Notes: generated by a model not told the origin, from the sequence alone. A stretch of 64,000 nt of DNA from IMGVR_UViG_3300036944_001289:62001-126000, one strand, 5' to 3'. Numbered from the stretch's first letter, positions 8,620-64,000 are shown. Numbers and translations are program-made.

Positions 8620-9846
8620 TTATATTATATTTATATTACCTGAAACTGACGGTGTTAATGCGTTTACGTAGCATATAGTACCTGTAGATGATGGTGTCCA
8701 CATGATTGTACCTGTGGTTATACCTGAGGTACTGTTGTTACCGTATATATCTGTTATTGACGATGTGTCAAGTGCACTATTTCTTATTGCAAACGGTATA
8801 GATGTACCTACTATGAGGTCGTAATTAGTGTTAGCAGATAGTGTAATTGTTGGATTACTACCTGATGATTGATCTGTTCTAAATTCACCACTAAAAGACG
8901 ATACGTTTATAACTACAGAGCTTGAAGTAAACAACATACTATAAACTGTAGTAGTTGGTGAGGGTGTAGTAGTTGTGGTCGTTGTCGTTGTAGTTGTGGT
9001 CGTTGTGGTTGTTGTGGGGTCGGGTGGGTCGATCGGTGGTAGAGTTGTTGTAGTTGTAGTAGTTGTTATTGGTATTTCAGGTTCTGGTATTATAATAGGT
9101 GGTAGGGATATTATAGGATCCGGTGCACTGCCTAATGAAAATAGTAAGTTACCGTCAATACTACCATTAAAATTTATATTTTTAACCTTTATAGGAAAAT
9201 TACCAGACCATGTTATACCTACACGCACACTATCAGGTACTTTACTTAAATCTATATTCGTATTATATGTTACAACTTGTTTATATATATCGTCTTCATA
9301 CGTATATAACGTTACCTGTTGCATATTGTTTTTAAATGCAACTCTAAATACATTCCATTCATCATTGAATGGTTTTGCAAAACCAGGTATATAATTCGAA
9401 CCAACGTATTCAAATGAGGATAGTTTTCTTACAACAAAGCTACTAGGCTGTAATGTATTAGTACCTGTATTAAATTGTTGTAATCCACCGTTTGATGTAA
9501 AAATACCATCTACATCATACATCGCACACATAAAAAAACCACTAACTGCTGAAAAAGGTGTTGTGTTAGTATCCGTAATAATACCTAAACCACCACCAGC
9601 ACCACCACCAGTTAATGTAGTTACTCTGCTATCTAATAGAAATACACCAAAACCATCATATATTGTGGAGAACTGCAAACCTAAAAAGTCATCATTTTGC
9701 AATAAGAGTCTGTCACCTGTTTGCAATAATAAGTTACCTAAAGATACTCTTTCTTCAGGGTCTTGTATCAAAAACGAAACAGTTATATCATTATCTGTTT
9801 TAAATGCTTGTTTATAAAGTATATTGCTACAAAAACCTGATGACAT
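8620..9846 (-). CDS. Virion protein: lectin/ConA-like N-domain, Pro/Thr-rich linker, small beta-sandwich C-domain
   Basis: DGFGVFL...GGGLG and VRVGITWSG resemble legume-lectin-type motifs; PIITTTTTTTTT/PDPTTTT(18) linker; WTP..GTICY...SGNI C-terminus; TAAATA-N5-ATG. Confidence 0.55.
   Translation of the reverse strand: MSSGFCSNILYKQAFKTDNDITVSFLIQDPEERVSLGNLLLQTGDRLLLQNDDFLGLQFSTIYDGFGVFLLDSRVTTLTGGGAGGGLGIITDTNTTPFSAVSGFFMCAMYDVDGIFTSNGGLQQFNTGTNTLQPSSFVVRKLSSFEYVGSNYIPGFAKPFNDEWNVFRVAFKNNMQQVTLYTYEDDIYKQVVTYNTNIDLSKVPDSVRVGITWSGNFPIKVKNINFNGSIDGNLLFSLGSAPDPIISLPPIIIPEPEIPITTTTTTTTLPPIDPPDPTTTTTTTTTTTTTTTTTPSPTTTVYSMLFTSSSVVINVSSFSGEFRTDQSSGSNPTITLSANTNYDLIVGTSIPFAIRNSALDTSSITDIYGNNSTSGITTGTIMWTPSSTGTICYVNALTPSVSGNINII
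8945..9070. repeat. Low-complexity poly-Thr codon tract
   Basis: Runs of (gtt/gta/gtg/gtc) on the + strand are ACN codons on the - strand. Confidence 0.9.
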
Positions 9847-9867
9847 GTAATTATTTAGTAAGTATTA

Positions 9868-10347
9868 TCAATTAGTAAAGAACCCGGATTTATCTAAAGT
9901 ACCTTTAAATTTAACTTGTTGTGTTTTGAATCTTGGTATTACAATTGTAAAATCGATAATATATTGAGATTCATCAAAAAGAGGTGTGACATTTATATTT
10001 TTAATAGATATCCTAGGTTCAAACTTGGTAACTGCATTTAATATTGTTTCACCTACGAGTCTTGCACGTTGCTCTGTTACAGGTAAGAATAGAAGGTCCC
10101 CAAAGTTGCAGCCAAAAGGTGGATTTAATATTTTTTCCCCTGGTGATGTAGTTAGTATACTCGTTATTGAGTTCTTAATTGCACCTTCGTTATTGTCAAC
10201 TTGTATATCAGCAATTTGACGTATTTTAGCTAGCTCATCACTAAACGTTCTATTTAGCTGTAAATCCATTCTAATATCGGTGTATATATTAGTGTTACTT
10301 CTATTTGCATCTGTATTTTGTAAAAAATCTAGCACAATCTTTGCCAT
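9868..10347 (-). CDS. gp25: Baseplate wedge protein gp25-like
   Basis: AIKNSITSILTTSPGEKILNPPFG...FEPRI signature. Confidence 0.9.
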   Translation of the reverse strand: MAKIVLDFLQNTDANRSNTNIYTDIRMDLQLNRTFSDELAKIRQIADIQVDNNEGAIKNSITSILTTSPGEKILNPPFGCNFGDLLFLPVTEQRARLVGETILNAVTKFEPRISIKNINVTPLFDESQYIIDFTIVIPRFKTQQVKFKGTLDKSGFFTN

Positions 10348-10395
10348 TTAAATATTTACATAGAGAGAAAAATATCAAACTTAATAAATAATAAT

Positions 10396-11010
10396 ATGCA
10401 GAAAAAGTTTCTCACCCTTATAGAAAACACTATCGTACGTAATACTAATGGAGGCTTACTTGTTGGTGATGTTGTAAAATTAGCTGATGGCTTTAAAACT
10501 AAAGAAAAATTTAAGGAATTACCTGATATTACAAAGGAGAAAATATTAGACTTTTCTAAAAGTGATCTCAACTTGTTTATAACAGCAATTAAAACAGAAT
10601 ATCCTTCAAGCTACACTTCAAGTGAATTAAATAGGGGTGGTTGTTTTTATGTCGAAATAGCCCCAGAGTTAGCTCCAGGTTTACTAGATAGACAAAATAA
10701 AGTAACAGTTTGTGCTTCATTACTTATCCCAGATAATAATTACCCTAACTTACCAAAAATACCAGATTCAATAAGAAGAAAAGAAAAGATCAACATGAAA
10801 CCTATACCTGTTGGTGCTTATGAAGAGAATGAAGAGACTATAAATTCACCACATAACCAAACTTGCAAAACACAGCAAGGTGATAAACTAGGTTTAACAC
10901 AAAAGACATTACCCACAAAGAATACAGTTATTCCTTCTGAGACAGCAAAAGACCCCAAGATCAAACCGATCAAGGAGTCTTATGTTAATAACTATATGAA
11001 TGGTTTCTAA
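10396..11010 (+). CDS. Hypothetical late protein
   Basis: 204-aa ORF; TAAATA-N5-ATG; N-terminus MQKKFLTLIE. Confidence 0.65.
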   Translation: MQKKFLTLIENTIVRNTNGGLLVGDVVKLADGFKTKEKFKELPDITKEKILDFSKSDLNLFITAIKTEYPSSYTSSELNRGGCFYVEIAPELAPGLLDRQNKVTVCASLLIPDNNYPNLPKIPDSIRRKEKINMKPIPVGAYEENEETINSPHNQTCKTQQGDKLGLTQKTLPTKNTVIPSETAKDPKIKPIKESYVNNYMNGF

Positions 11011-15581: not shown

Positions 15582-15943
15582 TGTAATTGTGCTTTAATAC
15601 TATCTAGTATGGGTTTTATAAATTCTTTTTTAATAATTTTAATTGTTTTTCCTACTAATTTAGGGTCTTGTGGGTATTTAATTTCATTTACCACACATAT
15701 CAACCACCACAACTGCGTGGTACCATAAGCTTGATAACTCAATACAGAGAATGGTGTATTTTTTTGTATGTTATATGTGAAAAAATAATCATTATTGATA
15801 TCTTTAGGTAATGTAATCTTTTTTATAATGTTATAAAAATAAAAGTCTTTTTCACCTGTTTGATATAATTTGAATATGTTTTCATAACGATATAGCTCTA
15901 ACTCTTGTAAATCGTCTATATTATTCTGATAGTTACCGTCCAT
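15578..15943 (-). CDS. gp53: Baseplate wedge gp53-like (LysM-like)
   Basis: LSYQAYGTTQLWWLICVVNEI motif. Confidence 0.8.
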   Translation of the reverse strand: MDGNYQNNIDDLQELELYRYENIFKLYQTGEKDFYFYNIIKKITLPKDINNDYFFTYNIQKNTPFSVLSYQAYGTTQLWWLICVVNEIKYPQDPKLVGKTIKIIKKEFIKPILDSIKAQLQ

Positions 15944-15955
15944 ATGTATATTTAA

Positions 15956-17092: not shown

Positions 17093-17093
17093 A

Positions 17094-18716
17094 TTATGTG
17101 TAAGCTCGTTGTAGGTCTCTTATAGAGGTTGTTTGAAATACATTTGTGACAGTATTATTTGTAGATACTACGCTATTATTGTTATTATTAATATTGGATA
17201 TTTTATTAGCTAATTCAGCTAATAATCTCTTGCTTTCATCTAATATTTCTAATTGCTTATATAATAGCTTATTGGATTCATCTGTTGCCTGTTTTAGTTT
17301 AACTAAATCTTGACTATTACTATCTACACCACCATCTACAGACTCGTAATTGATTGGGTTGATAGATTCGTCTGCATCTTCAGGGAAAGGATCTTTGTTA
17401 GTATCTTCTATATCTATTTTAGTCGGGAAGGGTATTTGATTAGGAGATGCTTCATCGGTTAGTGCATCTATGTTTTCTTCTTTATTTGCTTTTGCTTTTT
17501 CTATTTTAAGTTTTTCTGTAGCTGCTTTTTCTTCTGCTTCAGACTTTGCAATCTCTGCTTCTATACCTGGTATATCCAGACCCATTACAGACGCTAGTTT
17601 ACCTTTGACACTAACACCAAAGATTTCAAAATCGGGTATCATATTCCAAAGACCTAGTACTAGTTTATTTTTTATCTTTTTAAAGAAATCTACTAACATT
17701 ACACCTTTTGGTTTTGCTTTACCTCCTGCTACATCTGAACCACCTGCTTTATAATCCAAGAAAGCATTTAATACGCCTAGACCTATACTTAAAGCGGTTC
17801 CATAACCAGGTACTATACTTGCTATACCCGAGGCTACGTCAATTAACCCACCAACGACATCACCCTTTTTAAATCTAGTATATGCAGAGTACCAATCAAT
17901 TAAACTTCCAATACCTGGTATTCTTCTCAAGATCGGTTTAAGTATTTTTGAAGCACCACTAAGAATTTTTGTAAAAAGGTCTTTACCTAAACCTTTAGTG
18001 ATACCTATAAAAGGCTTTAATAGTCCTGTTGTAAGTCTTTTAAAACCTTCTTTTATAGGTCCAAATATTTTTTTGAAAAAATCTATAGGCATTATAGACT
18101 TTACTTTATTTAAAATAAAACCTATACCTTTCATTACTGTTAATGCAACTTTCTTAAATGCACCTTTTAGTCCAGAAAAACCACTCTCAATCAAATCGAG
18201 TGGTAGTAGATTTTTGATAAACTTTAATAACCCTGAAACCTTTTTAAGTAAAACGTTACGCATCCACTTTATACCCGCTAATATACCACCTTTACCTAGT
18301 AGTGTGAGTAAACCTTTTAGTGGGCCATCATTTAATAACCCCATAATAAGTGCCGCTAATCCGCTAAGTATTAATAGTGCAGGCCCTATTAAACCTTTTA
18401 TAAATTTCATAAAACCACTGTCCTCCTTAACAGCTTCTTCCTTTTTAATTGTTTTTGCTGTAGGTATTAGTGATTTTAACTTTCTTAAAGCTTTAACCCC
18501 GATATCATCTAAAGACATCGGTATCAACTCCTTAACAACACTTTCTTGTTTAGGATTTTGTCGAATATTGTTACCTAAGACATTTTTTACATTTTCAGGT
18601 GCCTTTTTTGATTTATCAGAGATAGGCTTATCTTTAGACGCAGCAATATGTTCTGACAATCTTCCTGTTGTTTGTGTTAGTAATAATAATACATCAGCTA
18701 GACTTCTATCTGCCAT
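17094..18716 (-). CDS. Tape-measure-like protein
   Basis: Amphipathic G/K/L/F repeats, hydrophobic segments, RIPGIGSLI...GDVVGGLI motif, baseplate context. Confidence 0.6.
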   Translation of the reverse strand: MADRSLADVLLLLTQTTGRLSEHIAASKDKPISDKSKKAPENVKNVLGNNIRQNPKQESVVKELIPMSLDDIGVKALRKLKSLIPTAKTIKKEEAVKEDSGFMKFIKGLIGPALLILSGLAALIMGLLNDGPLKGLLTLLGKGGILAGIKWMRNVLLKKVSGLLKFIKNLLPLDLIESGFSGLKGAFKKVALTVMKGIGFILNKVKSIMPIDFFKKIFGPIKEGFKRLTTGLLKPFIGITKGLGKDLFTKILSGASKILKPILRRIPGIGSLIDWYSAYTRFKKGDVVGGLIDVASGIASIVPGYGTALSIGLGVLNAFLDYKAGGSDVAGGKAKPKGVMLVDFFKKIKNKLVLGLWNMIPDFEIFGVSVKGKLASVMGLDIPGIEAEIAKSEAEEKAATEKLKIEKAKANKEENIDALTDEASPNQIPFPTKIDIEDTNKDPFPEDADESINPINYESVDGGVDSNSQDLVKLKQATDESNKLLYKQLEILDESKRLLAELANKISNINNNNNSVVSTNNTVTNVFQTTSIRDLQRAYT

Positions 18717-18735
18717 GTAATTATTTAATACTAGA

Positions 18736-20309: not shown

Positions 20310-21184
20310 TATTTCTGGAATGGAGATATACGAGGAACGATACCTTTGATACCTCTATTAGATATAGCGTCAATTATATCTGGTAAAGGTAAATAAAGTG
20401 TATCTTTTAAAGCATATCTACTATATGTAAAAGATACGTTGTAGGTATCCATACCTTCTGTATCATATTTTAGGTTTCTTGTTGACAGATTTAACGGTAC
20501 ACAATCATAAAAACTCCAGACTTTTCTTGGAATCATTGATAGGTTTTGATAGGATCTGGAGTATTGTATAAGAGTTATATTACATTTAGGGTTTTTTCTT
20601 ATTTCTTCCTTATTATTGGGATCTCTTGCAACATAACCATAATGTGAAGCCATTATTAGCCATGGTCTGATAACTAGATCAGTAAATGAAGTGTTTGTTT
20701 CCATGAACTGAAGAGTTAATTGTTGATCAGTAAATGGTGATCTATTAGTTAATACACTACCAGGTATAAATCCTCTATTATTATCAATAGTTGCTGTTTC
20801 TACTCCAAGATTTTCGGAGGGTATATCTGCACCTTGTAAAAAGATACAACCTACTACACCTTGCATTGGTGTAGATGTTAATATTTTTTTAGCTCTATCA
20901 ATGTCGAAGTTTTTCTTATCACCATCTACGAACTCTAAACTTCTCATCATTGATGTGTTGAGGCCTGATGGAAATGTATCGAATATAGCTATAAATTGTG
21001 TTCTTAAGGGTATGGTACCTACCCATGATTGTAAAGAGGTTAAAAAATAATCTCTAAAACTTATTAATGGCACACCAGGTATGTTCATACCAAAAAGCTG
21101 TACATTAGGTTGTGCTAGTGTACCACCAGCAAATTGGGACGCACCTGTTATAAAATTACCTGTAGCATTTAAGATACCGGACAT
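20309..21184 (-). CDS. Baseplate-tube initiator (gp54-like)
   Basis: QGADIPSEN, LTLQFMET, WSFYDCVP, NVSFTYS tube-family motifs. Confidence 0.65.
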   Translation of the reverse strand: MSGILNATGNFITGASQFAGGTLAQPNVQLFGMNIPGVPLISFRDYFLTSLQSWVGTIPLRTQFIAIFDTFPSGLNTSMMRSLEFVDGDKKNFDIDRAKKILTSTPMQGVVGCIFLQGADIPSENLGVETATIDNNRGFIPGSVLTNRSPFTDQQLTLQFMETNTSFTDLVIRPWLIMASHYGYVARDPNNKEEIRKNPKCNITLIQYSRSYQNLSMIPRKVWSFYDCVPLNLSTRNLKYDTEGMDTYNVSFTYSRYALKDTLYLPLPDIIDAISNRGIKGIVPRISPFQK

Positions 21185-21196
21185 ACTAATATTTAG

Positions 21197-21440: not shown

Positions 21441-21986
21441 TTAACCTGTTTTGCGCCAGTAATGGTAGGCTACTGTAACGTTAAAATTTTGCAACTCACC
21501 AGTAGCAGTCATATCATATTCAAGTGCTGCAACATCTCTAATACTAACACCTACGAGTTGATATTGTGCTATTTTATTAAGCTGTTTGTCTAATTGAACT
21601 AAGTCAATTACTGCTGACTTTTTAGGTGTAAAATAGTTACCTGTCGAATTAGCATCGTTAAATGTATCGTCAACAACTCTTAAGAATTTCTCTCTTAATT
21701 GCTGTGCAGCATCACAATAAAAGTTTATTGAGTATGATTCACTGCCAGGGTATTGGACAACACCAGGTATGTTGAAATTCAACCCCATATAAGGTGCTTG
21801 GAAGTTTACGATTGATTTTGCAGGTAAAGATGCTGTTCTGCAGTAAACTAAATCTGTTTCACCAATTACAGTGCTGCTGCCATCACCAAAGTTAATATTC
21901 AATACTCTAAAGAGGTTATTTCTTGAAAAGTCCTTAACCTGGGCTTGTGTGTAAAAGTCTTGTATACCTTGTTTGACGTCTGCCAT
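21441..21986 (-). CDS. gp19: Tail tube protein
   Basis: RNNLFRV, CRTASLP, PYMG..F..PG, LVQLD, FNVTVAYHYW. Confidence 0.9.
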   Translation of the reverse strand: MADVKQGIQDFYTQAQVKDFSRNNLFRVLNINFGDGSSTVIGETDLVYCRTASLPAKSIVNFQAPYMGLNFNIPGVVQYPGSESYSINFYCDAAQQLREKFLRVVDDTFNDANSTGNYFTPKKSAVIDLVQLDKQLNKIAQYQLVGVSIRDVAALEYDMTATGELQNFNVTVAYHYWRKTG

Positions 21987-22002
21987 ATGTATTATTATTT
22001 AA

Positions 22003-22200
22003 TCACCCGAACAATAATTGACTATTATTTGAATGAATTTTGCTATCTAAAAGAACGTTCTTAATAGTTATATCACCTGTAGAGTACCATGTTCCACTAA
22101 TCTTAAATCCTAAAGATGTCTGTTCTTCTAAAATACCTGATTTTTCTTCTGTGCTAAATTTTGTAAAAAAGTATACTGTTTGTCCTGTATATATGCTCAT
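22003..22200 (-). CDS. Small hypothetical protein
   Basis: 65-aa ORF with TAAATA upstream. Confidence 0.55.
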   Translation of the reverse strand: MSIYTGQTVYFFTKFSTEEKSGILEEQTSLGFKISGTWYSTGDITIKNVLLDSKIHSNNSQLLFG

Positions 22201-22211
22201 ATTAATAATAT

Positions 22212-22358
22212 TTATTTGCGGGCGTGTTCAGACCAGTCGTTTCTATAGGAACCTTGTATATAAAATCTACGTCTATTGCGCTTAGCCCTTGTTTCTTTTA
22301 TTCTTTCCCGTTTCGATTTATTACGACATGCATCAGGATCATGTTTATAAGGTCTCAT
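22212..22358 (-). CDS. Small Arg/Lys-rich peptide (48 aa; absent from ORF track)
   Basis: MRPYKHDPDACRNKSKRERIKETRAKRNRRRFYIQGSYRNDWSEHARK*; its stop overlaps the next gene's TAAATA. Confidence 0.5.
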   Translation of the reverse strand: MRPYKHDPDACRNKSKRERIKETRAKRNRRRFYIQGSYRNDWSEHARK

Positions 22359-24887: not shown

Positions 24888-24967
24888 TCTATAGTTATTT
24901 ATGTCTCCCTTGCCTGTTTTTTTATGACACTAAAAATAAAACACCGGGTGTTTCAATAAATAATATT

Positions 24968-25672
24968 ATGTGGATATATAAGATAAATATAGATGATTAT
25001 GAATACATAGGATCAACATATAATAAAAAAGGCCCTGAAGAAAGAAGAAGACAACATGTAAGAGGGTTAATCAAGGGCACACACGTTAACAAGAAGATGC
25101 AAAATGTCTTTAATAAACATCAAACTTTTAGATATACCGTTTTATGTTCCTGTCTTAAATTAGAGCACTTAATACATATTGAGGAAGAATTTATATTGCA
25201 ATCTATGAACGTATTAAAAGATAAATGTCTTAACTTAACGTTATCTTATTCAGGTGGTAGTGGTTGGATGAAGTTTAAGAGCTCGGAAGAGATTCAAAAA
25301 ATACATAGCAAAAGAAGATTATCACCCAGCAGACAACAAATAAGAAATTTAGCCCATAAACAAACGTTACAGGCTAAGTCTGAAGAGGAAAAAGAAAAGA
25401 TATATAAAAAGCAATCTGATGGTCGTAAAAAGAATTTAGTAAACCGTAAAAATTATACACCTATTAATTTAGAAATAACAATACCTGGCGGAAGACCTAG
25501 TGTAGATATATACCATACAGAGCAGGATTTTTTTAAAAAGACAAGATTTGAAACCTCTACACTTTGCACATTAAAGCAGCATGGAATACATGTAGTAAAA
25601 AGAATTTTACCTAACACAAAACACAACTACCCAAAGGGTACTATTGTAAAGTTTATAGAGGTTCAGAAATAA
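24968..25672 (+). CDS. Free-standing GIY-YIG homing endonuclease
   Basis: WIYKI...YIGST...RRQH...H.NKKMQNVFNK...IEEE; inserted antisense between gp3 and gp18 with its own TAAATA-N5-ATG. Confidence 0.75.
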   Translation: MWIYKINIDDYEYIGSTYNKKGPEERRRQHVRGLIKGTHVNKKMQNVFNKHQTFRYTVLCSCLKLEHLIHIEEEFILQSMNVLKDKCLNLTLSYSGGSGWMKFKSSEEIQKIHSKRRLSPSRQQIRNLAHKQTLQAKSEEEKEKIYKKQSDGRKKNLVNRKNYTPINLEITIPGGRPSVDIYHTEQDFFKKTRFETSTLCTLKQHGIHVVKRILPNTKHNYPKGTIVKFIEVQK

Positions 25673-27913: not shown

Positions 27914-27920
27914 GATGCAT

Positions 27921-27930
27921 TAAATATTTA
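27921..27930. promoter_or_regulatory. Palindromic TAAATATTTA: probable bidirectional late promoter for gp17 and the divergent gene
   Basis: Reads TAAATA on both strands, between ATGs at 27913 (-) and 27932 (+); matches the core of the T4 late promoter TATAAATA; gp55 is in the window. Confidence 0.65.
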
Positions 27931-27931
27931 C

Positions 27932-28818: not shown

Positions 28819-28834
28819 GTACATAAATAATAAT

Positions 28835-31564: not shown

Positions 31565-31593
31565 CTTTATATTTAATCGATTAAATATAAATA
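31554..31593. repeat. Direct repeat copy 1 (divergent late-promoter region)
   Basis: aagttactcatctttatatttAATCgattaaatataaata; 37/40 identical to 32028-32067. Confidence 0.85.
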
Positions 31594-32027: not shown

Positions 32028-32067
32028 AAGTTACTCATCTTTATATTTTGTTGATTAAATATAAATA
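32028..32067. repeat. Direct repeat copy 2
   Basis: aagttactcatctttatatttTGTTgattaaatataaata. Confidence 0.85.
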
Positions 32068-32072
32068 ATAAT

Positions 32073-46668: not shown

Positions 46669-46715
46669 ACTGAATGATATTAACTTATTTTTGGTTTTCA
46701 AGATTAAATAATAAT

Positions 46716-55112: not shown

Positions 55113-55982
55113 TTAAAATATTAAGAAATCAAATTTATAACCGTTTTCTTCTACACATTTCTTTTTTGCTAAATTTCTTTCCAAATCAATTTTAAATGTG
55201 TATTCACTTTTAACTTCAATTATTCTTTTTTCTTTAATTATAAAAATATCTGGATAATATCTATGCTCTTTACCATTATATGTATACGTAAAGGGAGGCA
55301 TGTTACATTTACCTGTTTCGATATCATCTTCTGTATAACCTTTAGCTAATAATAAATTAATTGCTTTATTTTCATAGCCTTGTGTTTTAAATTCCTTCTC
55401 TCCTACTATAAATGTTTTTATAGAAAAAGCGCTATTTTGTTGTTTTTCAAAATACTCTGCAACTTGCATAGGGTTAATAACTCCATACTCTTCTTTAAAT
55501 TTTTCTTGATATCTCTTTATTAATTCACCCCAACCATTATATTTTAATATAATGGTCTGTTTAAACAATTCGTTAGTAACATTTTTATAATTATATTGTT
55601 CTTTTCTGTTTCTTTTTTTAATACCATTTTCATTTAAAACTCTAATAATAACACAATTATCTACGCTGTATTTTTTGGATACATAATTGACACCCTTACC
55701 GTTGGAATACTCCTGAATAATATCTTTTATCTCATCTTCTGTAAATTTTTTGTAAATTGTATTGTTTCTTTTTTCATTATATCTTAATATGTTTCTGGAT
55801 TCTTTTTTATTACGTAACGAAACACCGTTTTTAATTATTATTTCTCTAATTACAGATACATTAACGGCATATAGGTTAGCAAGTTCTGACGCTGAGTAAC
55901 CTTCAATATAATTTATTATAATTTCTTTAGCTTTACCTTTTGTATTTTGATGCCTACTTTCATAAACAATATCTATGTTCAT
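55113..55982 (-). CDS. Free-standing PD-(D/E)XK endonuclease with HTH repeats (paralogue of 32565-33587)
   Basis: YGVINPMQ, QGYE, YYPDIF...IIEVKS; TAAATA-N5-ATG. Confidence 0.78.
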   Translation of the reverse strand: MNIDIVYESRHQNTKGKAKEIIINYIEGYSASELANLYAVNVSVIREIIIKNGVSLRNKKESRNILRYNEKRNNTIYKKFTEDEIKDIIQEYSNGKGVNYVSKKYSVDNCVIIRVLNENGIKKRNRKEQYNYKNVTNELFKQTIILKYNGWGELIKRYQEKFKEEYGVINPMQVAEYFEKQQNSAFSIKTFIVGEKEFKTQGYENKAINLLLAKGYTEDDIETGKCNMPPFTYTYNGKEHRYYPDIFIIKEKRIIEVKSEYTFKIDLERNLAKKKCVEENGYKFDFLIF

Positions 55983-56017
55983 ATATATATTTATTGTTTT
56001 GGTTATTGTATTCTTAA

Positions 56018-58042: not shown

Positions 58043-59095
58043 TAATTTCTTTTTTTATACTTTCTATTTGACTGTTATATGGTTTGTGTGACCAAAATTT
58101 AATAATATTATATCCATTGTCTTTAGCAATTAAATGTTTCTTTTTTTCATGTTCTATTTTTGATGTTATGGAGATGTTTTTATATGGGTATTTAAAATTT
58201 TTAATTTCATCATGTGACATAATTTCAGGATCTGGGTGAAATTCATATCTGTTGTATTCGATAATAATCTTAAGAGAAGATATTGTAAAATCAAAGTAAA
58301 ATATTTTTTTATTATCTCTTAATGAGAACTCCTTAGACCCTGTAATTCCTATCATGATATCATTACGTTGTATACCTAATTTCCTACAAAACTTATATAA
58401 AGGTATTAAAATCTTTAAACTTTCTTTAGAGGCTTTGCCGCGTTTCTTATATGTAATATATTTAAAATTATAATAGTGTGTGTTAAAATTTTCTGTTGTT
58501 TGTTCTATTTTGTTTTCTAAAATATACTTTTTTGTTTTGTGTATGATGTATTGATCTGAACCTTTTTGTACCCTAAATTTACAATAATCATCTAAATTAC
58601 AATTTCGTAATATAAACGACTCTAAACTATGTTGTTTAAGTTTGTTTATTAACTCAATTTCTTTACTACTTTTACAAAGTAATGTAATTTGCCACTTTTT
58701 CTGTCGGTTATTAAAAACTTTTAAACCTTCTAATTCTCCATACTTTTCAATACATTTTTTAAGTGAAAACGTAGACTGCCTTTCCTTAACCTTATTAATT
58801 GCATCTTGCGTTGTTAATCCTTTTTAACCCAATAACCAACTTGATTATTTCTCCAATCCTTTCGTCCTGTATTTTTGCTTTTACTTTTTTGCGATAATAT
58901 TTGTTGATGCTCTAATACTTTTTTAATAGCCTCATCTTCTGTATACCCTTTTTTAATCCAAAAGTACTTTGAGGATTTTCTAAATGAGCTTACATGCCTT
59001 TTTGCTTCTTCTTCTGTAAAAACTATTCCAGTATCAGGGTTGATTCTTTTTCTAGTTACCCAAAATTGCCATTGTTGTGGTGAATTGTAACTCAT
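58014..59095 (-). pseudogene. Vsr/DUF559-like homing endonuclease with a -1 frameshift at ~58820 (about 360 aa if restored)
   Basis: YWVKK|D* becomes YWVKKGLTTQDAINKV in the -1 frame, open to 58014; FYFDF...IIIEYN.YEFH...K...A..NGY.II.FW; own TAAATA-N5-ATG. Confidence 0.8.
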
Positions 59096-59103
59096 ATAAT
59101 TAT

Positions 59104-59337
59104 TTATTGATTCTCAATAAATTTTTTAAACTTTTCCAAAACCATTGCATCCTTTATTTGAATAGTTACTTCAGTCTGCGGATCAACACACTTACCTACA
59201 CCGTTTCTTCTGTCTTCCTTATCTCTATTAATACCGGTGATAATATTTAAACCTGTATTAAAGTCTAAACTAACCACATCATCACCTACTGATAGGAAGT
59301 TTTTTATCTTTATGTTTTTAAAGTTTACGTACTTCAT
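59104..59337 (-). CDS. gp46: gp46 N-terminal precursor: 49-aa N-extein plus 28-aa IntN
   Basis: IKNFLSVG...NIITGIN...NGVGK|CVDPQTEVTIQI...; ATGA-coupled to gp47. Confidence 0.92.
   Translation of the reverse strand: MKYVNFKNIKIKNFLSVGDDVVSLDFNTGLNIITGINRDKEDRRNGVGKCVDPQTEVTIQIKDAMVLEKFKKFIENQ
59107..59190 (-). mobile_element. Split intein N-fragment (IntN, 28 aa)
   Basis: Block A CVDPQTEV directly after the Walker A Lys. Confidence 0.88.
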
Positions 59338-60404
59338 GTAATTACCTTATTGTATAAGGATAAAGTATATTTTATAATTTCCTGTTTGTTATTTATATCT
59401 AACATGCTTACAAATTCTGTTACAATATTTTCTATTTCAGCGCCCTTTATGTCAGAGTCTACTACATCTTCGTGTACTTTTAGTTTATTGTAGTTAACAT
59501 CGTAATCTATTTTAAGATCTGCAGGTTTAAATGTTGTTATTTTACCGACTAAAAGATCTAGATGGTCTGTTGATATATTTTTATCTACTATTAGCTTAAT
59601 AATATTACCTTTAAAGTTATTGCTAAAATATGTGATTGGGTCTTTGTTCGTAATAATCTCTGAAAGAGAAACTTTTAGATGTTTAGGTGTTAATGTGTTT
59701 TCTTTAAATTCAAATTGTAGTGTATCTGTATCTAATAGATAATAACCTTTTGTTTGATAGGCATCACCGAAGTCTGTCTGGAATGGGTTACCTACGTAAA
59801 TTATTTTGCAGATGTTTGAAAATACCTTTTCATCTCGTTGATGAAAGTGTCCTGAAAATACTAGCTTACTTTTTGCTGTTAAATCATCTGGGTTATCTCC
59901 ATGTTCGCAGATTTTATGACCGTTCATTCTAAAATTCTGTAGTTCAAAATGACCAAACACTACATCACTTTGCGGAATATCTTTTATGTCACATCCCCAA
60001 GGGCAGAATGTAAATCGTTTACCATTAAAATCTACACTGGTTATATTATCAAAAATTTGTATATTAGAATTACCTTTCATTATTGAAAGGCTATGAACAT
60101 CTGATGTGTTCTTATAATAGCAGCAATGGTTACCTGGTATCATAATAATCTTAAATTTACTTAATTTTTGTAAAATTAGTGAGTGATAATGTAGAGTTTT
60201 AACTTCTACTGCATCTCTATAATGCATCCAATCACCACAAAATATAACAGTATCTATATTATTAGATTCGAGCTCAGATACAAACCAATTTGCCCAGTTT
60301 AAAGCAACATTTAACCAAAAATCGCTATTTTGATGTACCCCTAAATGTAAGTCCGTAAATATTGCTATTTTATTATTCAGAGGAGTCACTGTCATAATCA
60401 TCAC
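59334..60404 (-). CDS. gp47: Recombination nuclease (Mre11/SbcD-like)
   Basis: TDLHLG, CGD, PGNH, GHFE, SGHFH, YVGNP. Confidence 0.93.
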   Translation of the reverse strand: MMIMTVTPLNNKIAIFTDLHLGVHQNSDFWLNVALNWANWFVSELESNNIDTVIFCGDWMHYRDAVEVKTLHYHSLILQKLSKFKIIMIPGNHCCYYKNTSDVHSLSIMKGNSNIQIFDNITSVDFNGKRFTFCPWGCDIKDIPQSDVVFGHFELQNFRMNGHKICEHGDNPDDLTAKSKLVFSGHFHQRDEKVFSNICKIIYVGNPFQTDFGDAYQTKGYYLLDTDTLQFEFKENTLTPKHLKVSLSEIITNKDPITYFSNNFKGNIIKLIVDKNISTDHLDLLVGKITTFKPADLKIDYDVNYNKLKVHEDVVDSDIKGAEIENIVTEFVSMLDINNKQEIIKYTLSLYNKVIT

Positions 60405-60822
60405 TAATTGGCTTTACGTAGAGGTCAACATCGCAATTTTCTGTTAACTCTTGCTCATACATTCTTTCTTTATACTCTGTTATCGTATCGTGATGCTTCT
60501 TTTCTTTTTTGATTCTATTAATGAATGCATTGAATGCTATTGTTGTAAAGTAACTGAAAGGGTTAAATTCTGATTTAATATCGAACTTTTTATTCTTAAC
60601 TGCAGTATACATCTTTACTATTGCATCGCCTACCATTTCATCTCTATATGTATAGTTAATAAAATTTGAGGAATAACTTAGACCTGTTGCAATTTTATTA
60701 ATATATTCAGCTAACTCATTTGTAATTTCATTAGATTTATAATATATAACAAGTTTCTGTTTAAACTCTTCAGGGTCTACATAATATTCTGTCTTTTTAG
60801 GTTTTGGACCTCGTTTTGCCAT
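60373..60822 (-). CDS. gp55: Late-transcription sigma factor
   Basis: YVD...KIATGLS..NFINYTYRDEMVGD...NPFSYFTTIAFNAFINRIKKEKK. Confidence 0.92.
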   Translation of the reverse strand: MAKRGPKPKKTEYYVDPEEFKQKLVIYYKSNEITNELAEYINKIATGLSYSSNFINYTYRDEMVGDAIVKMYTAVKNKKFDIKSEFNPFSYFTTIAFNAFINRIKKEKKHHDTITEYKERMYEQELTENCDVDLYVKPISDDYDSDSSE

Positions 60823-60835
60823 AGTGAGATTATAT

Positions 60836-62281
60836 TTAATCTAGAGGTTTTTCAACCAGTTTTGTTGAAGAATAATTAATTTTTTCTCTATCGTAAATAG
60901 ATTTGCGATGCATACCGTGAGCACCACCGTATTTTAGATTATCTACTATATCTACAATAGTCAATTTTTGTTTGTTGTTGTGTAATCTTAAACCTCTACC
61001 AATCGATTGTATAATTCTTATAAAGCTTTTACCACCTGATCCAAAAACTATCATATGTATATTTTTTACATTAATACCAGTAGAAAATATGGCACTTATT
61101 GCAACGCAAACTATATTATCTTTAACTTCCATCTCCTTAATAACTCTGTCTCTCTCATCTACATCTACATCACCTCGTATAAAATATACGATTTTATCTT
61201 GTAATTTAGCTTTAAGATTATCGTAAATTAACTGGCCGTGTGATATATGATTTACTAGTATTAGAGTATTGTTATTAAAGTTTTTGCATAGTGTATTAAT
61301 TATATTGTTTCTAAATTTATTATTATAGATGTGTTCTAATTCTGATTTATACTTATTAGTGCCAGGTATTTGAGGAACTTTAGTAGTATAATCTATATCT
61401 AATACTTTAATAGATACTTGTGTAAGATATTTCTCTTCTCTTAATTCAAAACTACTCTTTTCATAGATAATAGTACCTAATTTACTTATAATATTTAGCT
61501 CTTCACCTCTATCATCAGGTAATGTACCTGTAAGACCAAATTTATGGTATGTTTTAATTTCATCTACAAGTTTACATATTTTGTTTTTACCTTTTAATTT
61601 GTGCGTTTCATCAACAATAACTAAATCTACATCGTTTATCCATAGATTTTCTGCATATTTGCTTTGTAATATACCTATATTTGCTATGATAACATCACTG
61701 CTAAGATCAGGTTCTATATTTCCAGTCCATCTTGTAACAGTAAATGGTACTTTATAGCTTAGAAAATCAGAGTGTGTTTGGTTTACAAGTGATAGATCTG
61801 GAACTATCATTAGTGCTTTTAGTTTCTTAACCTTATAATTATAAAACGTACTCAATAAACTTGCTGAGATTAAAGTCTTACCACCACCTGTACCTATTTT
61901 AATTATACCTCTACCGAATGAAAGCGCGTTCTTTATTGTTTCGCTTTGAAAATCTCTAAGTTTAAGAGATAGATCATCATAAACATCAACACCGGTTACT
62001 GTTGGTCTAACTACCTTTGGTATATCTTTATCAATATCTAGGTTTACATCAGTAAAACTTACAGATATAAATTTACATATATCAAAAAATAGCCCCGGCT
62101 CAAACATACCTGTAGGTGTTATAAAGTATTTTCTATCAGCAACAAACCTCATCCCTTTTTTTCTCATAAAAAAGGCACCTTCGTTCTTTACACTGAAATG
62201 TTCCCTTATTTCAGTTAGAAAATCACCAGATAACCTACAAAGTCCACGATTTTTTAGATAATCTATACGTATACTTTTCAT
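60836..62281 (-). CDS. uvsW: SF2 DNA helicase
   Basis: LRDFQ, TGGGKT, VDETH, GLTGT, STGIN, QSIGRGLR. Confidence 0.93.
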   Translation of the reverse strand: MKSIRIDYLKNRGLCRLSGDFLTEIREHFSVKNEGAFFMRKKGMRFVADRKYFITPTGMFEPGLFFDICKFISVSFTDVNLDIDKDIPKVVRPTVTGVDVYDDLSLKLRDFQSETIKNALSFGRGIIKIGTGGGKTLISASLLSTFYNYKVKKLKALMIVPDLSLVNQTHSDFLSYKVPFTVTRWTGNIEPDLSSDVIIANIGILQSKYAENLWINDVDLVIVDETHKLKGKNKICKLVDEIKTYHKFGLTGTLPDDRGEELNIISKLGTIIYEKSSFELREEKYLTQVSIKVLDIDYTTKVPQIPGTNKYKSELEHIYNNKFRNNIINTLCKNFNNNTLILVNHISHGQLIYDNLKAKLQDKIVYFIRGDVDVDERDRVIKEMEVKDNIVCVAISAIFSTGINVKNIHMIVFGSGGKSFIRIIQSIGRGLRLHNNKQKLTIVDIVDNLKYGGAHGMHRKSIYDREKINYSSTKLVEKPLD

Positions 62282-62707: not shown

Positions 62708-62917
62708 ATGATAAGTTTTAAAAAATTCTATGCTATTTTTAAAGAAGATAGCTCTTACTCAGATGGTACATTAGGGCCTGCTGCAAATGTATCTCACAAT
62801 GCAATAGCCAATAGCGATTGGTATGCACCTGGTGACTATAGAATACCAAAAGGTGGTAGAGTATATAGACGCAGTGGTGTTGTAAAGCGTAAAAAGAGAC
62901 GTAAATACAAAAAATGA
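62708..62917 (+). CDS. Small basic late protein (69 aa)
   Basis: MISFKKFYAIFKED...KRKKRRKYKK; TATAAATA upstream. Confidence 0.6.
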   Translation: MISFKKFYAIFKEDSSYSDGTLGPAANVSHNAIANSDWYAPGDYRIPKGGRVYRRSGVVKRKKRRKYKK

Positions 62918-63339
62918 TAACAGATTTTGGTCATTGGATTAATTGCACATCATTAAATGTTGAGGAGTTACCCTATGGCTTTATCTATTTGATAGAGAAT
63001 AAAGTAACAAATAAAAAGTATATAGGTAAAAAACAAATTAAAAGTGTAAAAAAGCTTAAACCATTAAAAGGTAAGAAGAATAAAAGGCATTTTGACGTTG
63101 AGACAGATTGGAAGACTTATACATCTTCTTCTAATGAGGTTAATAGTGACATAGAAAAGTACGGAAAAGATAACTTTTCGTTCTCAATTATAAAATTTTG
63201 TGATTCTAAAAGTGAATTAGCATACTTTGAAGCAAAATTACAATTCGAAGAGAACGTACTATTACGTGAGGATTACTATAACGGTATCATAAATTTGAGA
63301 ATAGGTAAAAATTGTTTTATAAAAAAGTTGAAAACATAA
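62914..63339 (+). CDS. Small GIY-YIG-fold nuclease
   Basis: YGFIYLIEN...KYIGKK...WKTYTSS...E...YYN. Confidence 0.75.
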   Translation: MITDFGHWINCTSLNVEELPYGFIYLIENKVTNKKYIGKKQIKSVKKLKPLKGKKNKRHFDVETDWKTYTSSSNEVNSDIEKYGKDNFSFSIIKFCDSKSELAYFEAKLQFEENVLLREDYYNGIINLRIGKNCFIKKLKT

Positions 63340-63359
63340 AATACAGTATATAATACAGT
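63328..63359 (+). promoter_or_regulatory. Representative sigma70-type promoter TTGAAA-N15-TATAAT-N5-ATG
   Basis: The same 15-nt spacer layout precedes dut, uvsX, gp55 and uvsY. Confidence 0.65.
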
Positions 63360-63917
63360 ATGTCTGTTATATACGATGTTGCTGATGATATTAATATAAT
63401 CGACGTTAATTCGATGTTTGTTGAAAAAACCTACGTAGATATAGTTAATGATTTATATAAGCTAGATCTATTGAAACCTAAAATAACTACAGATGTTAAG
63501 CGAATAATGTATCATCATGTAATACATGATATTTGTGAGTTTTATTTATGTAGTCCTCTTAGAAAACCTGTGGTATTATTCAATAATACTCAGTTAGAAG
63601 ACTGTCTAATCTTTCAATACTTTACAGAAGAAGATATATTGGGCATATTAACAAGTGTATTTGCAAAAATACAAAAGACTTTACCTATTAGATGCTACTT
63701 AAGTAAGTATAGTGGCAAGCATCTAAAGTACAAATCTAACTCTGATGATGGTAAAATACTAAATACCTTGAATTTAATAAAGGAAATTAGTAATTCACCT
63801 GTTAAATCTGATATAACATTCGAGAATATTAAAAAATTTACTAAGAAATACGGATTGATATACTTAAATCAAGAATACTTTACCAGGCTTGCAACTAAAC
63901 ATCTTTATATTCGTTAA
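63360..63917 (+). CDS. Hypothetical protein, possibly a degenerate RNase H/FEN N-domain
   Basis: IIDVNSMF...KRIMYHHVIHDI...PVVLFN...KIQKTLPI pattern. Confidence 0.55.
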   Translation: MSVIYDVADDINIIDVNSMFVEKTYVDIVNDLYKLDLLKPKITTDVKRIMYHHVIHDICEFYLCSPLRKPVVLFNNTQLEDCLIFQYFTEEDILGILTSVFAKIQKTLPIRCYLSKYSGKHLKYKSNSDDGKILNTLNLIKEISNSPVKSDITFENIKKFTKKYGLIYLNQEYFTRLATKHLYIR

Positions 63918-63934
63918 TAAATATAAATATTATT

Positions 63935-64000
63935 ATGAGTATTTTCGATAAAAAAGCTAACCAGATCATTTCATCATTTTTATTAGAAGGTGTAGATTCC
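63935..64000 (+). CDS. Late protein, N-terminus only (runs off window end)
   Basis: TAAATA-N5-ATG; MSIFDKKANQIISSFLLEGVDS. Confidence 0.55.
   Translation, partial: MSIFDKKANQIISSFLLEGVDS

What the first reader, a model, noticed from the sequence alone, without database searches (positions are those of the whole stretch)
9846..63935. Late genes appear leaderless: TAAATA exactly 5 nt before the start codon
Seen: TAAATA-N5-start occurs at 9846, 10347, 10396, 15943, 18716, 21184, 24968, 27932, 28235, 28835, 31564, 31593, 32073, 32565 (GTG), 40172, 46716, 55982, 59095 and 63935, with N7-N9 variants at 4688, 21986, 22200 and 24887. No Shine-Dalgarno sequence fits in between. Known: T4 gp55 recognises TATAAATA and initiates a few nt downstream; gp55 is present here. 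Inference: transcripts start at or next to the AUG, so the late programme is leaderless. This is a clue to the host and a rule for correcting start codons. Four of the endonuclease genes use the same signal.
Basis: partly seen in the sequence, partly recalled or inferred. Interest (0 to 1): 0.6.

Follow-up and report, generated by a model that had tools for sequence, protein, structure and literature searches.

The report
Late promoter fused to start codons
In this uncultured T4-like phage and its many environmental relatives, the short DNA signal that switches on the late (virion) genes sits 5 to 8 bases before the start codon. The late messages therefore probably begin at or right next to the AUG, which T4 itself does not do, but no RNA data confirm this.

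Summary
All 19 listed TAAATA-N5-start sites are there: 22 TAAATA-N5-RTG matches in the window against 5.6 ± 2.3 in shuffles. In the whole 209-kb genome N5 gives 51 matches, against about 8 at other spacings.

The box marks virion genes: 13 of 15 annotated virion or packaging genes have it, and 0 of 19 replication or nucleotide genes. A gp55 homologue is present and keeps T4 gp55's −12 and −8 pocket residues. By the T4 cryo-EM numbering, TATAAATA spans −13 to −6, so TAAATA-N5-A puts the A of ATG at +1.

No box lies more than 16 nt from a start codon. 19 of the 50 N5 genes head divergent units, some across intergenic gaps of only 14–28 bp. The adjacency holds in relatives with 32–65% protein identity and is absent from T4.

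- Shine-Dalgarno sequences are missing from the whole genome and the whole clade, so their absence at late genes is not diagnostic.
- About 40% of boxes sit at N6–N11.
- The major capsid gene uses a conserved structured leader instead.
- The host is unresolved.
- Only three endonuclease-like genes were confirmed.

No RNA data exist, so "leaderless" stays an inference, at about 0.6.

The parts
60373..60822 (-). gp55 homologue (late sigma-like promoter-recognition factor), 149 aa
   Evidence: phrog_234 E 7.7e-28. Only copy in the genome. Aligns to T4 gp55 chain 7D7C_F at E 1.9e-8, with L54, F86, Y97 and T99 conserved, R57→S and H95→F. Lies next to the gp47/gp46 homologues, as in T4.
9844..9857 (-). 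TAAATA-N5-ATG, 408-aa gene 8620–9846
   Evidence: no family hit
10345..10358 (-). TAAATA-N5-ATG, gp25-like baseplate wedge gene 9868–10347
   Evidence: phrog_261 E 1.6e-24; orthologue in G001 is also N5
10385..10398 (+). TAAATA-N5-ATG, gene 10396–11010, divergent from 10347 across 48 bp
   Evidence: orthologues are N5 (G001) and N6 (G002)
15941..15954 (-). TAAATA-N5-ATG, baseplate-wedge-like gene 15578–15943
   Evidence: weak PHROG baseplate/tail hits
18714..18727 (-). TAAATA-N5-ATG, 540-aa gene 17094–18716
21182..21195 (-). TAAATA-N5-ATG, tail-tube-like gene 20309–21184
   Evidence: phrog_45; orthologue in G002 is N5
24957..24970 (+). TAAATA-N5-ATG, gene 24968–25672, divergent from the sheath gene
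27921..27934 (+). TAAATA-N5-ATG, gene 27932–28765. The box is half of the palindrome TAAATATTTA (27921–27930), shared with the terminase gene on the other strand.
   Evidence: the box-defined start replaces TTG at 27896
27911..27930 (-). TAAATA-N11-ATG, large terminase gene 26225–27913
   Evidence: phrog_5989 E 8e-57
28224..28237 (+). TAAATA-N5-ATG at an in-frame internal ATG of ORF 27932–28765
   Evidence: 28235−27932 = 303, so the ATG is in frame
28824..28837 (+). TAAATA-N5-ATG, gene 28835–29182. A 12-bp-stem terminator ends 5 nt before the box.
31562..31575 (-). TAAATA-N5-ATG, gene 31217–31564. Back to back with the next box across a 28-bp intergenic region.
31582..31595 (+). TAAATA-N5-ATG, small gene 31593–31757
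32062..32075 (+). TAAATA-N5-ATG, gene 32073–32498 (second of two overlapping boxes, TAAATATAAATA)
   Evidence: orthologues are N5 in G001 and G002
32554..32567 (+). TAAATA-N5-GTG, HTH/endonuclease-like gene 32565–33587
   Evidence: paralogue of 55113–55982
40170..40183 (-). TAAATA-N5-ATG, gene 39816–40172
46705..46718 (+). TAAATA-N5-ATG, 607-aa gene 46716–48539
   Evidence: the box-defined start is 14 codons downstream of the first ATG
55980..55993 (-). TAAATA-N5-ATG, HTH/endonuclease-like gene 55113–55982
59093..59106 (-). TAAATA-N5-ATG, gene 58814–59095
63924..63937 (+). TAAATA-N5-ATG, gene starting at 63935 that runs off the window (second of two overlapping boxes)
4686..4701 (-). TAAATA-N7-ATG, 1097-aa gene 1395–4688
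8616..8633 (-). TAAATA-N9-ATG, 1039-aa gene 5499–8618
21984..22001 (-). TAAATA-N9-ATG, tail tube gene 21441–21986
   Evidence: phrog_45 E 1.3e-19; orthologues are N7 (G001) and N5 (G002)
22198..22214 (-). TAAATA-N8-ATG, 65-aa ORF 22003–22200
24885..24901 (-). TAAATA-N8-ATG, tail sheath gene 22533–24887
   Evidence: phrog_23 E 5.5e-72. In about 40 distinct relatives the box lies 5–8 nt from the sheath ATG.
60820..60838 (-). TAAATA-N10-ATG before the gp55 gene itself
62902..62916 (+). TAAATA-N6-ATG, GIY-YIG homing-endonuclease-like gene 62914–63339
   Evidence: orthologues are N6 (G001) and N4 (G002)

Best explanation
TAAATA (extended consensus A-A-TAAATA-W-T-W-A-T) is the −10-like late promoter read by the phage's gp55 homologue on host RNA polymerase. 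It has no −35 element, as in T4.

In this phage and its uncultured clade the box has moved right up against the start codon. It is usually 5 nt away, sometimes 6 to 11, and never more than 16. With T4 geometry, where the box ends at −6, an N5 promoter starts transcription on the A of AUG. That gives a leaderless late mRNA; N6–N11 promoters give leaders of 1 to 6 nt.

Genes inside late operons, and all early genes, are translated without Shine-Dalgarno pairing, because the host evidently does not use it.

What is shown:
- the motif, its spacing and its statistics;
- its restriction to virion genes;
- its conservation in relatives;
- the presence of gp55 with conserved pocket residues.

What is inferred:
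- that gp55 reads this box;
- that the start site lies 6 nt after it;
- that the resulting 5'-terminal AUG is what the ribosome uses.
For: 1. **Spacing peak.** N5 gives 51 against about 8; the window has 22 against 5.55 ± 2.29; the hexamer sits at −11..−6 in 50 of 319 genes against 0.33 expected.
2. **Temporal class.** A box at N5–N11 precedes 13 of 15 annotated virion or packaging genes and 0 of 19 replication or nucleotide genes; Fisher P = 1e-7. The two virion genes without a box are internal to operons.
3. **gp55.** A homologue is present with Y97, T99, F86 and L54 conserved. Relatives G001 and G002, which show the same peak, also have gp55. Tenacibaculum phage PTm1, which also lacks SD, has neither gp55 nor a peak.
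4. **Geometry.** T4 TATAAATA spans −13..−6 (PMC7892883), so N5 puts the A at +1.
   - The start codon is a purine in all 50 cases (44 ATG, 6 GTG, 0 TTG).
   - Position −1 is a pyrimidine in 82% here and in 89% of 171 N5 sites in relatives.
   - The N5 spacer is A/T-rich, like the melted segment of T4 late promoters (PMC2988020).
5. **No room for a leader.**
   - 19 of the 50 N5 genes are heads of divergent units; the intergenic region is 14–28 bp in five of them, and in one the two ORFs overlap by 7 bp.
   - 5 of 50 have a strong terminator ending 2–5 nt before the box, against 3 of 268 other genes.
   - No box lies more than 16 nt from a start.
6. **DNA-level signal.** TAAATA is depleted to 0.75–0.77 of expectation inside genes in both orientations, and a palindromic box serves two divergent genes (27921–27930).
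7. **Conservation.**
   - 77 IMG/VR loci with 47–61% sheath identity give N5 267 and N6 167, against 9–53 at other spacings.
   - 20 of 29 orthologue instances keep a box within 16 nt, against 6 of 80 for genes without a box; P = 3e-10.
8. **Contrast.** T4 has no N5 peak and shows a broad excess at N21–29.
Against: - There is no transcript evidence at all. No RNA run holds this phage, and short metagenome contigs cannot stand in for transcripts.
- The start-site position is carried over from E. coli RNA polymerase with T4 gp55 to an unknown host and a homologue that shares little sequence (alignment E 1.9e-8; H95→F, R57→S).
- The co-activators gp33 and gp45 were not found.
- About 40% of gene-proximal boxes are not at N5.
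- The most abundant late protein, the major capsid protein, does not follow the rule. It has a conserved leader of about 60–75 nt with hairpins and an AGGA.
- With N5 spacing the adenines fall at −6, −12 and −13 and often at −3. These are the positions that favour translation in the SD-less Flavobacterium johnsoniae (PMC6847099), so a translational role in read-through transcripts cannot be excluded.
- 336 TAAATA copies remain inside genes, so the hexamer alone cannot be the whole signal.
Confidence: 0.6

Rival explanations
1. The box is a translation-initiation signal in the mRNA: an A-rich, Kozak-like region for ribosomes that ignore Shine-Dalgarno sequences. It would act on long polycistronic late transcripts whose promoters lie elsewhere.
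For: - The genome and clade lack SD.
- In F. johnsoniae, adenines at −3, −6, −12 and −13 raise translation, and 87% of transcripts have leaders over 10 nt (PMC6847099).
- With N5 spacing the box gives A at −6 (100%), −12 (60%), −13 (64%) and −3 (48%).
- GeneMarkS-2 finds short non-SD motifs close to starts in FCB-group genomes (PMC6028130).
Against: - The hexamer is rigid: T at −11 and −7 is invariant, and one-mismatch variants are rare. It occurs in about a quarter of genes, by temporal class: 0 of 19 replication genes have it.
- Operon-internal virion genes and the capsid gene do without it.
- It is depleted in both orientations within genes, and it is used as a palindrome for divergent genes. 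Both are properties of DNA, not of mRNA.
- It equals the core of the T4 late promoter, and gp55 is present.
- PTm1, a phage of a Flavobacteriia host, shows a diffuse A peak at −14..−11 in all genes and no TAAATA peak.
- Relatives use N5 and N6 about equally, which shifts the adenines out of register.
Confidence: 0.12
2. The box has two uses. It is the gp55 promoter, and in read-through transcripts from upstream late promoters the same A/U-rich stretch serves as an unstructured initiation region. The spacing would be fixed by both needs, and late proteins would come from a mix of leaderless and leadered mRNAs.
For: - Late genes lie in co-directional runs in which many genes carry their own box.
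- In about half of the 31 co-directional cases the gap to the upstream gene is only 4–13 nt, so the box overlaps or abuts the end of that gene, and read-through is likely wherever no terminator intervenes.
- Only 5 of 50 have a strong terminator just upstream.
- The adenine positions match the F. johnsoniae optimum.
Against: Nothing argues directly against it. It adds a function rather than replacing one. The shift to N6 in relatives argues that the translational register is not the main constraint.
Confidence: 0.2
3. The box is a late promoter, but the start site is not the A of ATG. The gp55 homologue or the host polymerase would start a few bases earlier or later, so the mRNAs have very short leaders and are not strictly leaderless.
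For: - The homologue differs from T4 gp55 at two pocket residues.
- Relatives tolerate N5–N8 at the same gene, the sheath, so either the start site or the leader length must vary by up to 3 nt.
Against: - The distance from the −10 element to +1 is set by the polymerase core and is similar in E. coli σ70, T4 gp55 and Bacteroidota σA.
- The purine at the start codon's first base and the pyrimidine at −1 fit a start on the A.
Confidence: 0.07
4. Composition artefact, or a stop-codon effect: the pattern would arise from AT-richness, or because the TAA of the box is the upstream gene's stop codon at a fixed re-initiation distance.
For: The genome is 33% G+C. The TAA of the box is the upstream stop codon in 8 of the 50 N5 sites.
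Against: - Shuffles, backwards controls and neighbouring spacings all fail to give the peak.
- 42 of the 50 sites do not use the TAA as a stop, and 19 of 50 face a gene on the other strand.
- The AT-rich phages T4, Mosig and PTm1 show no peak.
Confidence: 0.01

Closest known systems
T4 late promoters (TATAAATA, gp55/gp33/gp45-dependent)
   Same: - The same core sequence, TAAATA, with no −35 element and an A/T-rich segment downstream.
- It precedes virion genes and some homing-endonuclease genes.
- A gp55 homologue is encoded next to the gp47/gp46 homologues.
- Many late genes within a cluster carry their own promoter.
   Different: - In T4 the box lies well upstream of the start codon, ahead of a leader with a Shine-Dalgarno sequence. 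T4 shows no N5 peak, an excess at N21–29, and SD in 64% of genes. Here the box is 5–11 nt from the start and there is no SD.
- The two bases upstream of the core are A-A rather than T-A.
- gp33 and gp45 were not identified.
Leaderless mRNAs of bacteria (Actinobacteria, Deinococcus-Thermus; GeneMarkS-2 'group C')
   Same: A −10 box at a fixed short distance (6–8 nt) from the start codon of the first gene of an operon is the accepted genomic signature of leaderless transcription (PMC6028130). Start codons are ATG or GTG.
   Different: - In those organisms the box is the host σA Pribnow box, and the remaining genes use SD.
- Here the box belongs to a phage-encoded factor and is confined to one temporal class, and the remaining genes have no SD either.
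Non-SD initiation in Bacteroidota (Kozak-like adenines; sequestered anti-SD)
   Same: No SD and A-rich upstream regions. The adenines of the N5 arrangement fall at the favoured positions −6, −12 and −13 (PMC6847099).
   Different: - F. johnsoniae transcripts have leaders averaging 33 nt.
- The Bacteroidota signal is diffuse and present at all genes, as in phage PTm1.
- The Bacteroidota σA −7 box is not enriched in this genome.
Poxvirus late promoter/initiator TAAATG (from my own knowledge, not tested here)
   Same: A TAAAT-type late element is merged with the start codon, so the promoter and the translation start form one module.
   Different: It is a eukaryotic virus with its own polymerase. 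Transcripts gain a poly(A) head by slippage, and the element overlaps the ATG instead of lying 5 nt upstream. This is an analogy only.

Membership tests
T4-type (gp55-dependent) late promoter | A gp55-family promoter-recognition protein is encoded by the phage | tested here: met
   phrog_234 E 7.7e-28; single copy; aligns to 7D7C chain F with Y97, T99, F86 and L54 conserved
T4-type (gp55-dependent) late promoter | An 8-bp TATAAATA −10-like element without a conserved −35 element | tested here: inconclusive
   The core TAAATA is invariant, but −13 and −12 are A (64%) and A (60%) rather than T-A. Nothing is conserved from −45 to −14. The full TATAAATA occurs at N5 only 8 times.
T4-type (gp55-dependent) late promoter | It lies upstream of late (virion, packaging) genes and not of early replication genes | tested here: met
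   13 of 15 against 0 of 19; Fisher P 1e-7
T4-type (gp55-dependent) late promoter | Co-activator gp33 and sliding clamp gp45 are encoded | tested here: inconclusive
   PF02916 and T4 gp45 used as a query found nothing. Pfam and PHROGs on clamp-sized neighbours found nothing. The clamp loader gp44 is present. gp33 was not searched for with a model of its own. Because both proteins diverge fast, absence is not shown.
T4-type (gp55-dependent) late promoter | Transcription starts 6 nt after the last A of the box, late in infection and dependent on gp55 | not testable with these tools
   No RNA run holds the phage
Leaderless mRNA | The −10 element lies at a fixed distance of about 5–8 nt from the start codon of operon-first genes | tested here: met
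   N5 50, N6 11, N7 5, N8 3 at gene starts; 19 of 50 head divergent units
Leaderless mRNA | The transcript's 5' end coincides with the A of AUG | not testable with these tools
   Inferred from T4 geometry only
Leaderless mRNA | The start codon is AUG (GUG tolerated) and no SD is present | tested here: met
   44 ATG, 6 GTG, 0 TTG. No SD, but this holds for all genes, so it does not discriminate.
Bacteroidota-type non-SD initiation region | A diffuse A-rich signal upstream of all genes, including those internal to operons | tested here: not met
   The box is rigid and confined to about a quarter of genes. Genes without a box lack the −14..−11 A peak seen in PTm1 (38–47% A against 56–64%).

The most novel reading that the evidence does not exclude
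A whole, widespread and uncultured clade of T4-superfamily phages (hundreds of contigs from lakes, sea and subsurface water) expresses most of its virion genes from truly leaderless mRNAs made by a gp55-type factor, while its host's own messages are leadered. The phage could then separate its late translation from host translation by message type. A second promoter-like class (GGAAC-N5-TAnnAT, 5–9 nt from ATG) would extend this to earlier genes, and the capsid gene's structured leader would be a separately controlled exception.
Probability: 0.3. Interest if true: 0.75.

Novelty: new variant of a known kind. Interest (0 to 1): 0.6.

Why it matters
If late transcripts really begin at the AUG, this is a natural system in which one 11-nt module (box, 5 nt, ATG) sets both the transcription start and the translation start for dozens of genes. 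It would also be a whole phage programme run on leaderless mRNA in a host that ignores Shine-Dalgarno sequences.

Practical uses:
- It gives a rule for annotating this clade. Start codons can be placed from the box: 10 of the 50 box-defined starts here differ from the longest ORF, and standard gene callers that look for an SD will misplace them.
- It allows late genes to be recognised among proteins that have no detectable homologues.

It also raises a testable evolutionary point. Where the host needs no ribosome-binding site, the leader may be dispensable, and the promoter may collapse onto the start codon.

The comparison of six genomes fits this:
- gp55 and SD present (T4, pelagiphage Mosig): the box lies far from the start.
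- gp55 present, SD absent (this phage, G001, G002): the box abuts the start.
- Neither gp55 nor SD (PTm1): no box peak.

Six genomes are few, so this is a pattern and not a demonstration.

Tried and rejected
- **RNA evidence.** The one run search found only DNA runs (shale-gas, lake and unnamed metagenomes). Read laying was therefore not used, because contigs of DNA runs cannot show a start site.
- **Short contigs as transcripts.** I first read the 1.5–1.9-kb metagenome contigs that just span the capsid gene or the 475-aa virion gene as possible transcripts. I rejected this. Short contigs are the most numerous, so requiring full gene coverage selects them by itself. One that could be read (L310) includes the box and what looks like the neighbouring divergent gene's start.
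- **Host.**
  - Relatives of the epimerase in genomes are 37–50% identical across many phyla, with Cytophagales highest at 50%; this is not diagnostic.
  - The T9SS sorting domain PF18962 and ribosomal protein bS21 (PF01165) are absent.
  - The Bacteroidota −7 box TAnnTTTG occurs 29 times against 31 expected upstream of genes.
  - The 27 phage tRNAs were not informative.
- **PTm1.** The pattern count with its backwards control suggested a peak (20 against 5). The full histogram showed none.
- **TATAAT.** It shows no fixed spacing to ATG.
- **5' structure.** Folding energy of the first 40 nt does not differ between N5 genes and other genes (P = 0.6).
- **Cultured relatives.** There are no near-identical records. 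The 540-aa protein found nothing. Sheath and DNA polymerase reach only 39–42% (C-terminal third) and about 30% identity to cultured T4-like phages.
- **Unknown box-preceded proteins.** Pfam and NCBIfam on ten of them gave nothing usable.
- **Capsid leader.** Rfam gave no family and RNAalifold gave no consensus.

Full report
**What the window is.**
The window is bases 62,001–126,000 of a 209,282-bp IMG/VR virus record. The record has direct terminal repeats, 33% G+C and 27 tRNA genes. DNA runs that hold it are shale-gas metagenomes; partial matches are in a lake-water metagenome and in metagenomes whose habitat is not named.

It is a deep branch of the T4 superfamily:
- The window encodes homologues of the T4 replication and recombination proteins: gp43 DNA polymerase, gp41 helicase, primase, gp32, gp44 clamp loader, UvsX, UvsY, UvsW and gp46/gp47.
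- It also encodes virion and packaging proteins (tail sheath, tail tube, gp25-like baseplate wedge, large terminase) and a gp55 homologue.
- Outside the window lie the major capsid protein, portal, neck, baseplate and fibre genes.
- No cultured phage is close. DNA polymerase is about 30% identical to cyanophage and pelagiphage enzymes, and the sheath is 39–42% identical over its last third.
- Uncultured relatives are many: at least 596 IMG/VR stretches and 568 metagenome stretches.

- The window has 22 TAAATA-N5-RTG matches against 5.55 ± 2.29 in shuffles; no shuffle reaches 22.
- Genome-wide, TAAATA-Nn-ATG gives 51 at n=5 and 1–16 at every other n up to 25, and the backwards control is flat.
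- At ORF starts the hexamer occupies −11..−6 in 50 of 319 genes, against 0.33 expected.
- The motif extends on both sides to A-A-TAAATA-W-T-W-A-T-ATG, with nothing conserved further upstream.
- Of the 22 window matches, two are not at gene starts, one (35225) precedes an internal ATG of a small ORF and was not assessed, and one is an in-frame internal ATG.

**What the box marks.**
- A box 5–11 nt from the start precedes 13 of the 15 virion or packaging genes that could be named. These are:
  - baseplate wedge genes (three);
  - tail tube genes (two);
  - sheath;
  - large terminase;
  - major capsid protein (in this genome only);
  - portal;
  - head-tail adaptor;
  - tail fibre;
  - a conserved virion protein;
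  - a tail protein.
- It precedes none of 19 replication, recombination or nucleotide-metabolism genes; Fisher P = 1e-7. The two virion genes without a box follow another late gene directly.
- Three endonuclease-like genes also carry it: two paralogous HTH/endonuclease-like genes at N5 and a GIY-YIG gene at N6. The gp55 gene has one at N10.

**Why it is read as a promoter.**
- TAAATA is the core of the T4 late promoter.
- The gp55 homologue is the only one in the genome. It aligns to the gp55 chain of the T4 late transcription complex and keeps Y97, the pocket for the −12 adenine, and T99, the pocket for the −8 adenine, as well as F86 and L54. H95 and R57 are replaced (pocket residues from PMC7892883).
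- The signal behaves as DNA, not RNA:
  - It is depleted to about 0.76 of a fourth-order Markov expectation inside genes in both orientations.
  - One palindrome, TAAATATTTA at 27921–27930, faces two divergent genes.
  - In the 28-bp gap at 31565–31592, two boxes stand back to back, each 5 nt from its start codon.
- 19 of the 50 N5 genes have a neighbour on the other strand, so they must have their own promoter. In five of them the whole intergenic region is 14–28 bp, and in one the two ORFs overlap by 7 bp.
- Five N5 genes have a strong terminator (11–13-bp stem plus a T run) ending 2–5 nt before the box, against 3 of 268 other genes at the same position; P = 0.003.
- Only 8 of 50 use the TAA of the box as the upstream stop codon. 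This rules out a re-initiation spacing as the general cause.

**Why the messages are inferred to be leaderless.**
- In the T4 complex the flipped adenines are at −12, −9 and −8, so TATAAATA spans −13 to −6. The P23 scaffold reads TATAAATA-CTCCT-G(+1).
- TAAATA-N5-ATG therefore places the A of ATG at +1.
- Consistent details:
  - The first base of the start codon is always a purine (44 A, 6 G, no TTG).
  - Position −1 is a pyrimidine in 82% of sites here and 89% of 171 distinct N5 sites in relatives.
  - The five spacer bases are A/T-rich, as in the melted segment of T4 late promoters.
- No gene-proximal box lies more than 16 nt from a start. The counts are N5 50, N6 11, N7 5, N8 3, N9 7, N10 3, N11 3 and N12–16 six in all, then background. 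The ordinary class of late promoter, with a 20–60-nt leader, is therefore missing.
- A −10 box 6–8 nt from the start codon of operon-first genes is the accepted genomic signature of leaderless transcription (PMC6028130).

**Conservation and contrast.**
- In 77 IMG/VR loci whose sheath is 47–61% identical, N5 gives 267 and N6 gives 167, against 9–53 at other spacings and 20–51 backwards.
- Before the sheath gene itself, the box lies 5–8 nt from the ATG in about 40 distinct relatives, although the flanking sequence differs. The printed offsets in that call are 3 too large for most rows.
- In the complete relative G001 and the 74%-complete relative G002, 20 of 29 orthologue instances of box genes keep a box within 16 nt, against 6 of 80 for genes without a box; P = 3e-10. 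Both relatives encode gp55.
- T4 has no N5 peak and shows a broad excess at N21–29. Pelagiphage Mosig has none either.
- SD-like cores precede 64% of T4 genes and 53% of Mosig genes, but only 10%, 16% and 13% of genes in this phage, G001 and G002. Control windows give 7–10%.
- Tenacibaculum phage PTm1 also lacks SD, but it has no gp55 and no TAAATA peak.

**Limits and exceptions.**
- No RNA data exist for this phage, and I found no valid proxy for transcript ends.
- gp33 and gp45 were not identified.
- The capsid gene is a clear exception:
  - In 69 of 70 distinct relatives no box lies within 16 nt of its start.
  - A conserved leader is present instead. It has a co-varying hairpin ending in CCT-GA, a second hairpin of variable sequence, and an invariant GGTCGA 19–33 nt before the ATG.
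  - It also has an AGGA or GGAG 9–15 nt before the ATG.
  - The TAAATA at N7 in this genome lies in the A-rich spacer of that leader and is probably fortuitous.
- The N5 register also puts adenines at the positions (−6, −12, −13 and often −3) that favour translation in SD-less F. johnsoniae. A second role for the box in read-through transcripts is therefore possible. The frequent N6 register in relatives argues that this is not the main constraint.

**Host.**
- The lack of SD across the clade points to a host that does not use SD pairing. The FCB group, chiefly Bacteroidota, is the usual case.
- Support is weak. The Bacteroidota σA −7 box is not enriched, the A peak at −14..−11 seen in PTm1 is absent, and host-like genes give no clear signal.
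- I leave the host open.

**Comparison with what is known, and verdict.**
- It works like a T4 late promoter and, by inference, like the leaderless operon heads of Actinobacteria or Deinococcus.
- I found no paper describing a gp55-type promoter fused to start codons, or a T4-like phage with a leaderless late programme. That search covers open-access literature only.
- I rate it a new variant of a known kind, with interest 0.6.
- Confidence that the box is the late promoter is about 0.85.
- Confidence that N5 transcripts begin at or within one base of the AUG is about 0.6.

Noticed in passing
Outside the window: G000:C1:165341–165430, − strand (L213:19341–19430), and loci L230–L309: The major capsid gene has a conserved structured leader instead of an abutting box. 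It has a co-varying hairpin ending in CCT-GA and a second hairpin whose sequence differs in almost every relative. GGTCGA is invariant 19–33 nt before the ATG (58 of 63), and AGGA or GGAG lies 9–15 nt before the ATG (56 of 58). This is an SD-like element in a clade that otherwise lacks SD. There is no Rfam match, and the function is unknown.
   Followed up: partly
Whole genome. Window examples: GGAAC at 34645–34649 (−, before primase 33584–34624), 39804–39808 (−, before 38958–39785), 49306–49310 (−, before QueC-like 48536–49288): A second promoter-like class: GGAAC-N5-TAnnAT, with the ATG 5–9 nt after the hexamer. GGAAC-N16..20-ATG gives 9, 10, 6, 4, 6 against about 4 in the control. It clusters on the − strand at genome 10–50 kb and 183–207 kb, before small genes of unknown function and some replication genes. 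It is not seen in relatives G001 and G002. It may also give very short leaders.
   Followed up: partly
window 28224–28237 within ORF 27932–28765: A perfect box-N5-ATG lies in frame, 101 codons inside a box-preceded gene. It could give a shorter protein from an internal late start, as occurs for some T4 genes.
   Followed up: no
window 31582–31593, 32056–32067, 63918–63929; palindromes at 27921–27930 and 10349–10358: Boxes occur as overlapping tandem pairs (TAAATATAAATA, giving N11 and N5 to the same ATG) and as palindromes (TAAATATTTA) that present a box on each strand.
   Followed up: partly
whole genome, coding regions: TAAATA is the second rarest of the 15 A4T2 hexamers inside genes. It stands at 0.75 (sense) and 0.77 (antisense) of a fourth-order Markov expectation, as if spurious late promoters were selected against.
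   Followed up: yes
Outside the window: genome 37.5–45 kb and 195.7–198.9 kb: 27 tRNA genes: 24 in one cluster on the − strand and three more near the other end.
   Followed up: no
window 32565–33587 and 55113–55982: Two paralogous genes with repeated HTH DNA-binding modules and weak endonuclease-family matches. Both are preceded by N5 boxes and both interrupt runs of genes on the other strand or of another class, as mobile homing-endonuclease genes do.
   Followed up: partly
relative G002 (IMG/VR record behind L077), 93717–94160: The gp55 match in this relative contains one in-frame TGA. This may be a sequencing error, a split gene or recoding; it was not examined.
   Followed up: no
window 35470–39785: A block of sugar and nucleotide-modification genes: two nucleotide-sugar epimerase-like genes, a thymidylate-synthase-like gene and a gene matching the PHROG family annotated 'DprA-like'. 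Glycosyltransferases lie at 44789–45505 and 53624–54673, and a QueC-like gene at 48536–49288. Together they may indicate DNA or surface modification.
   Followed up: no
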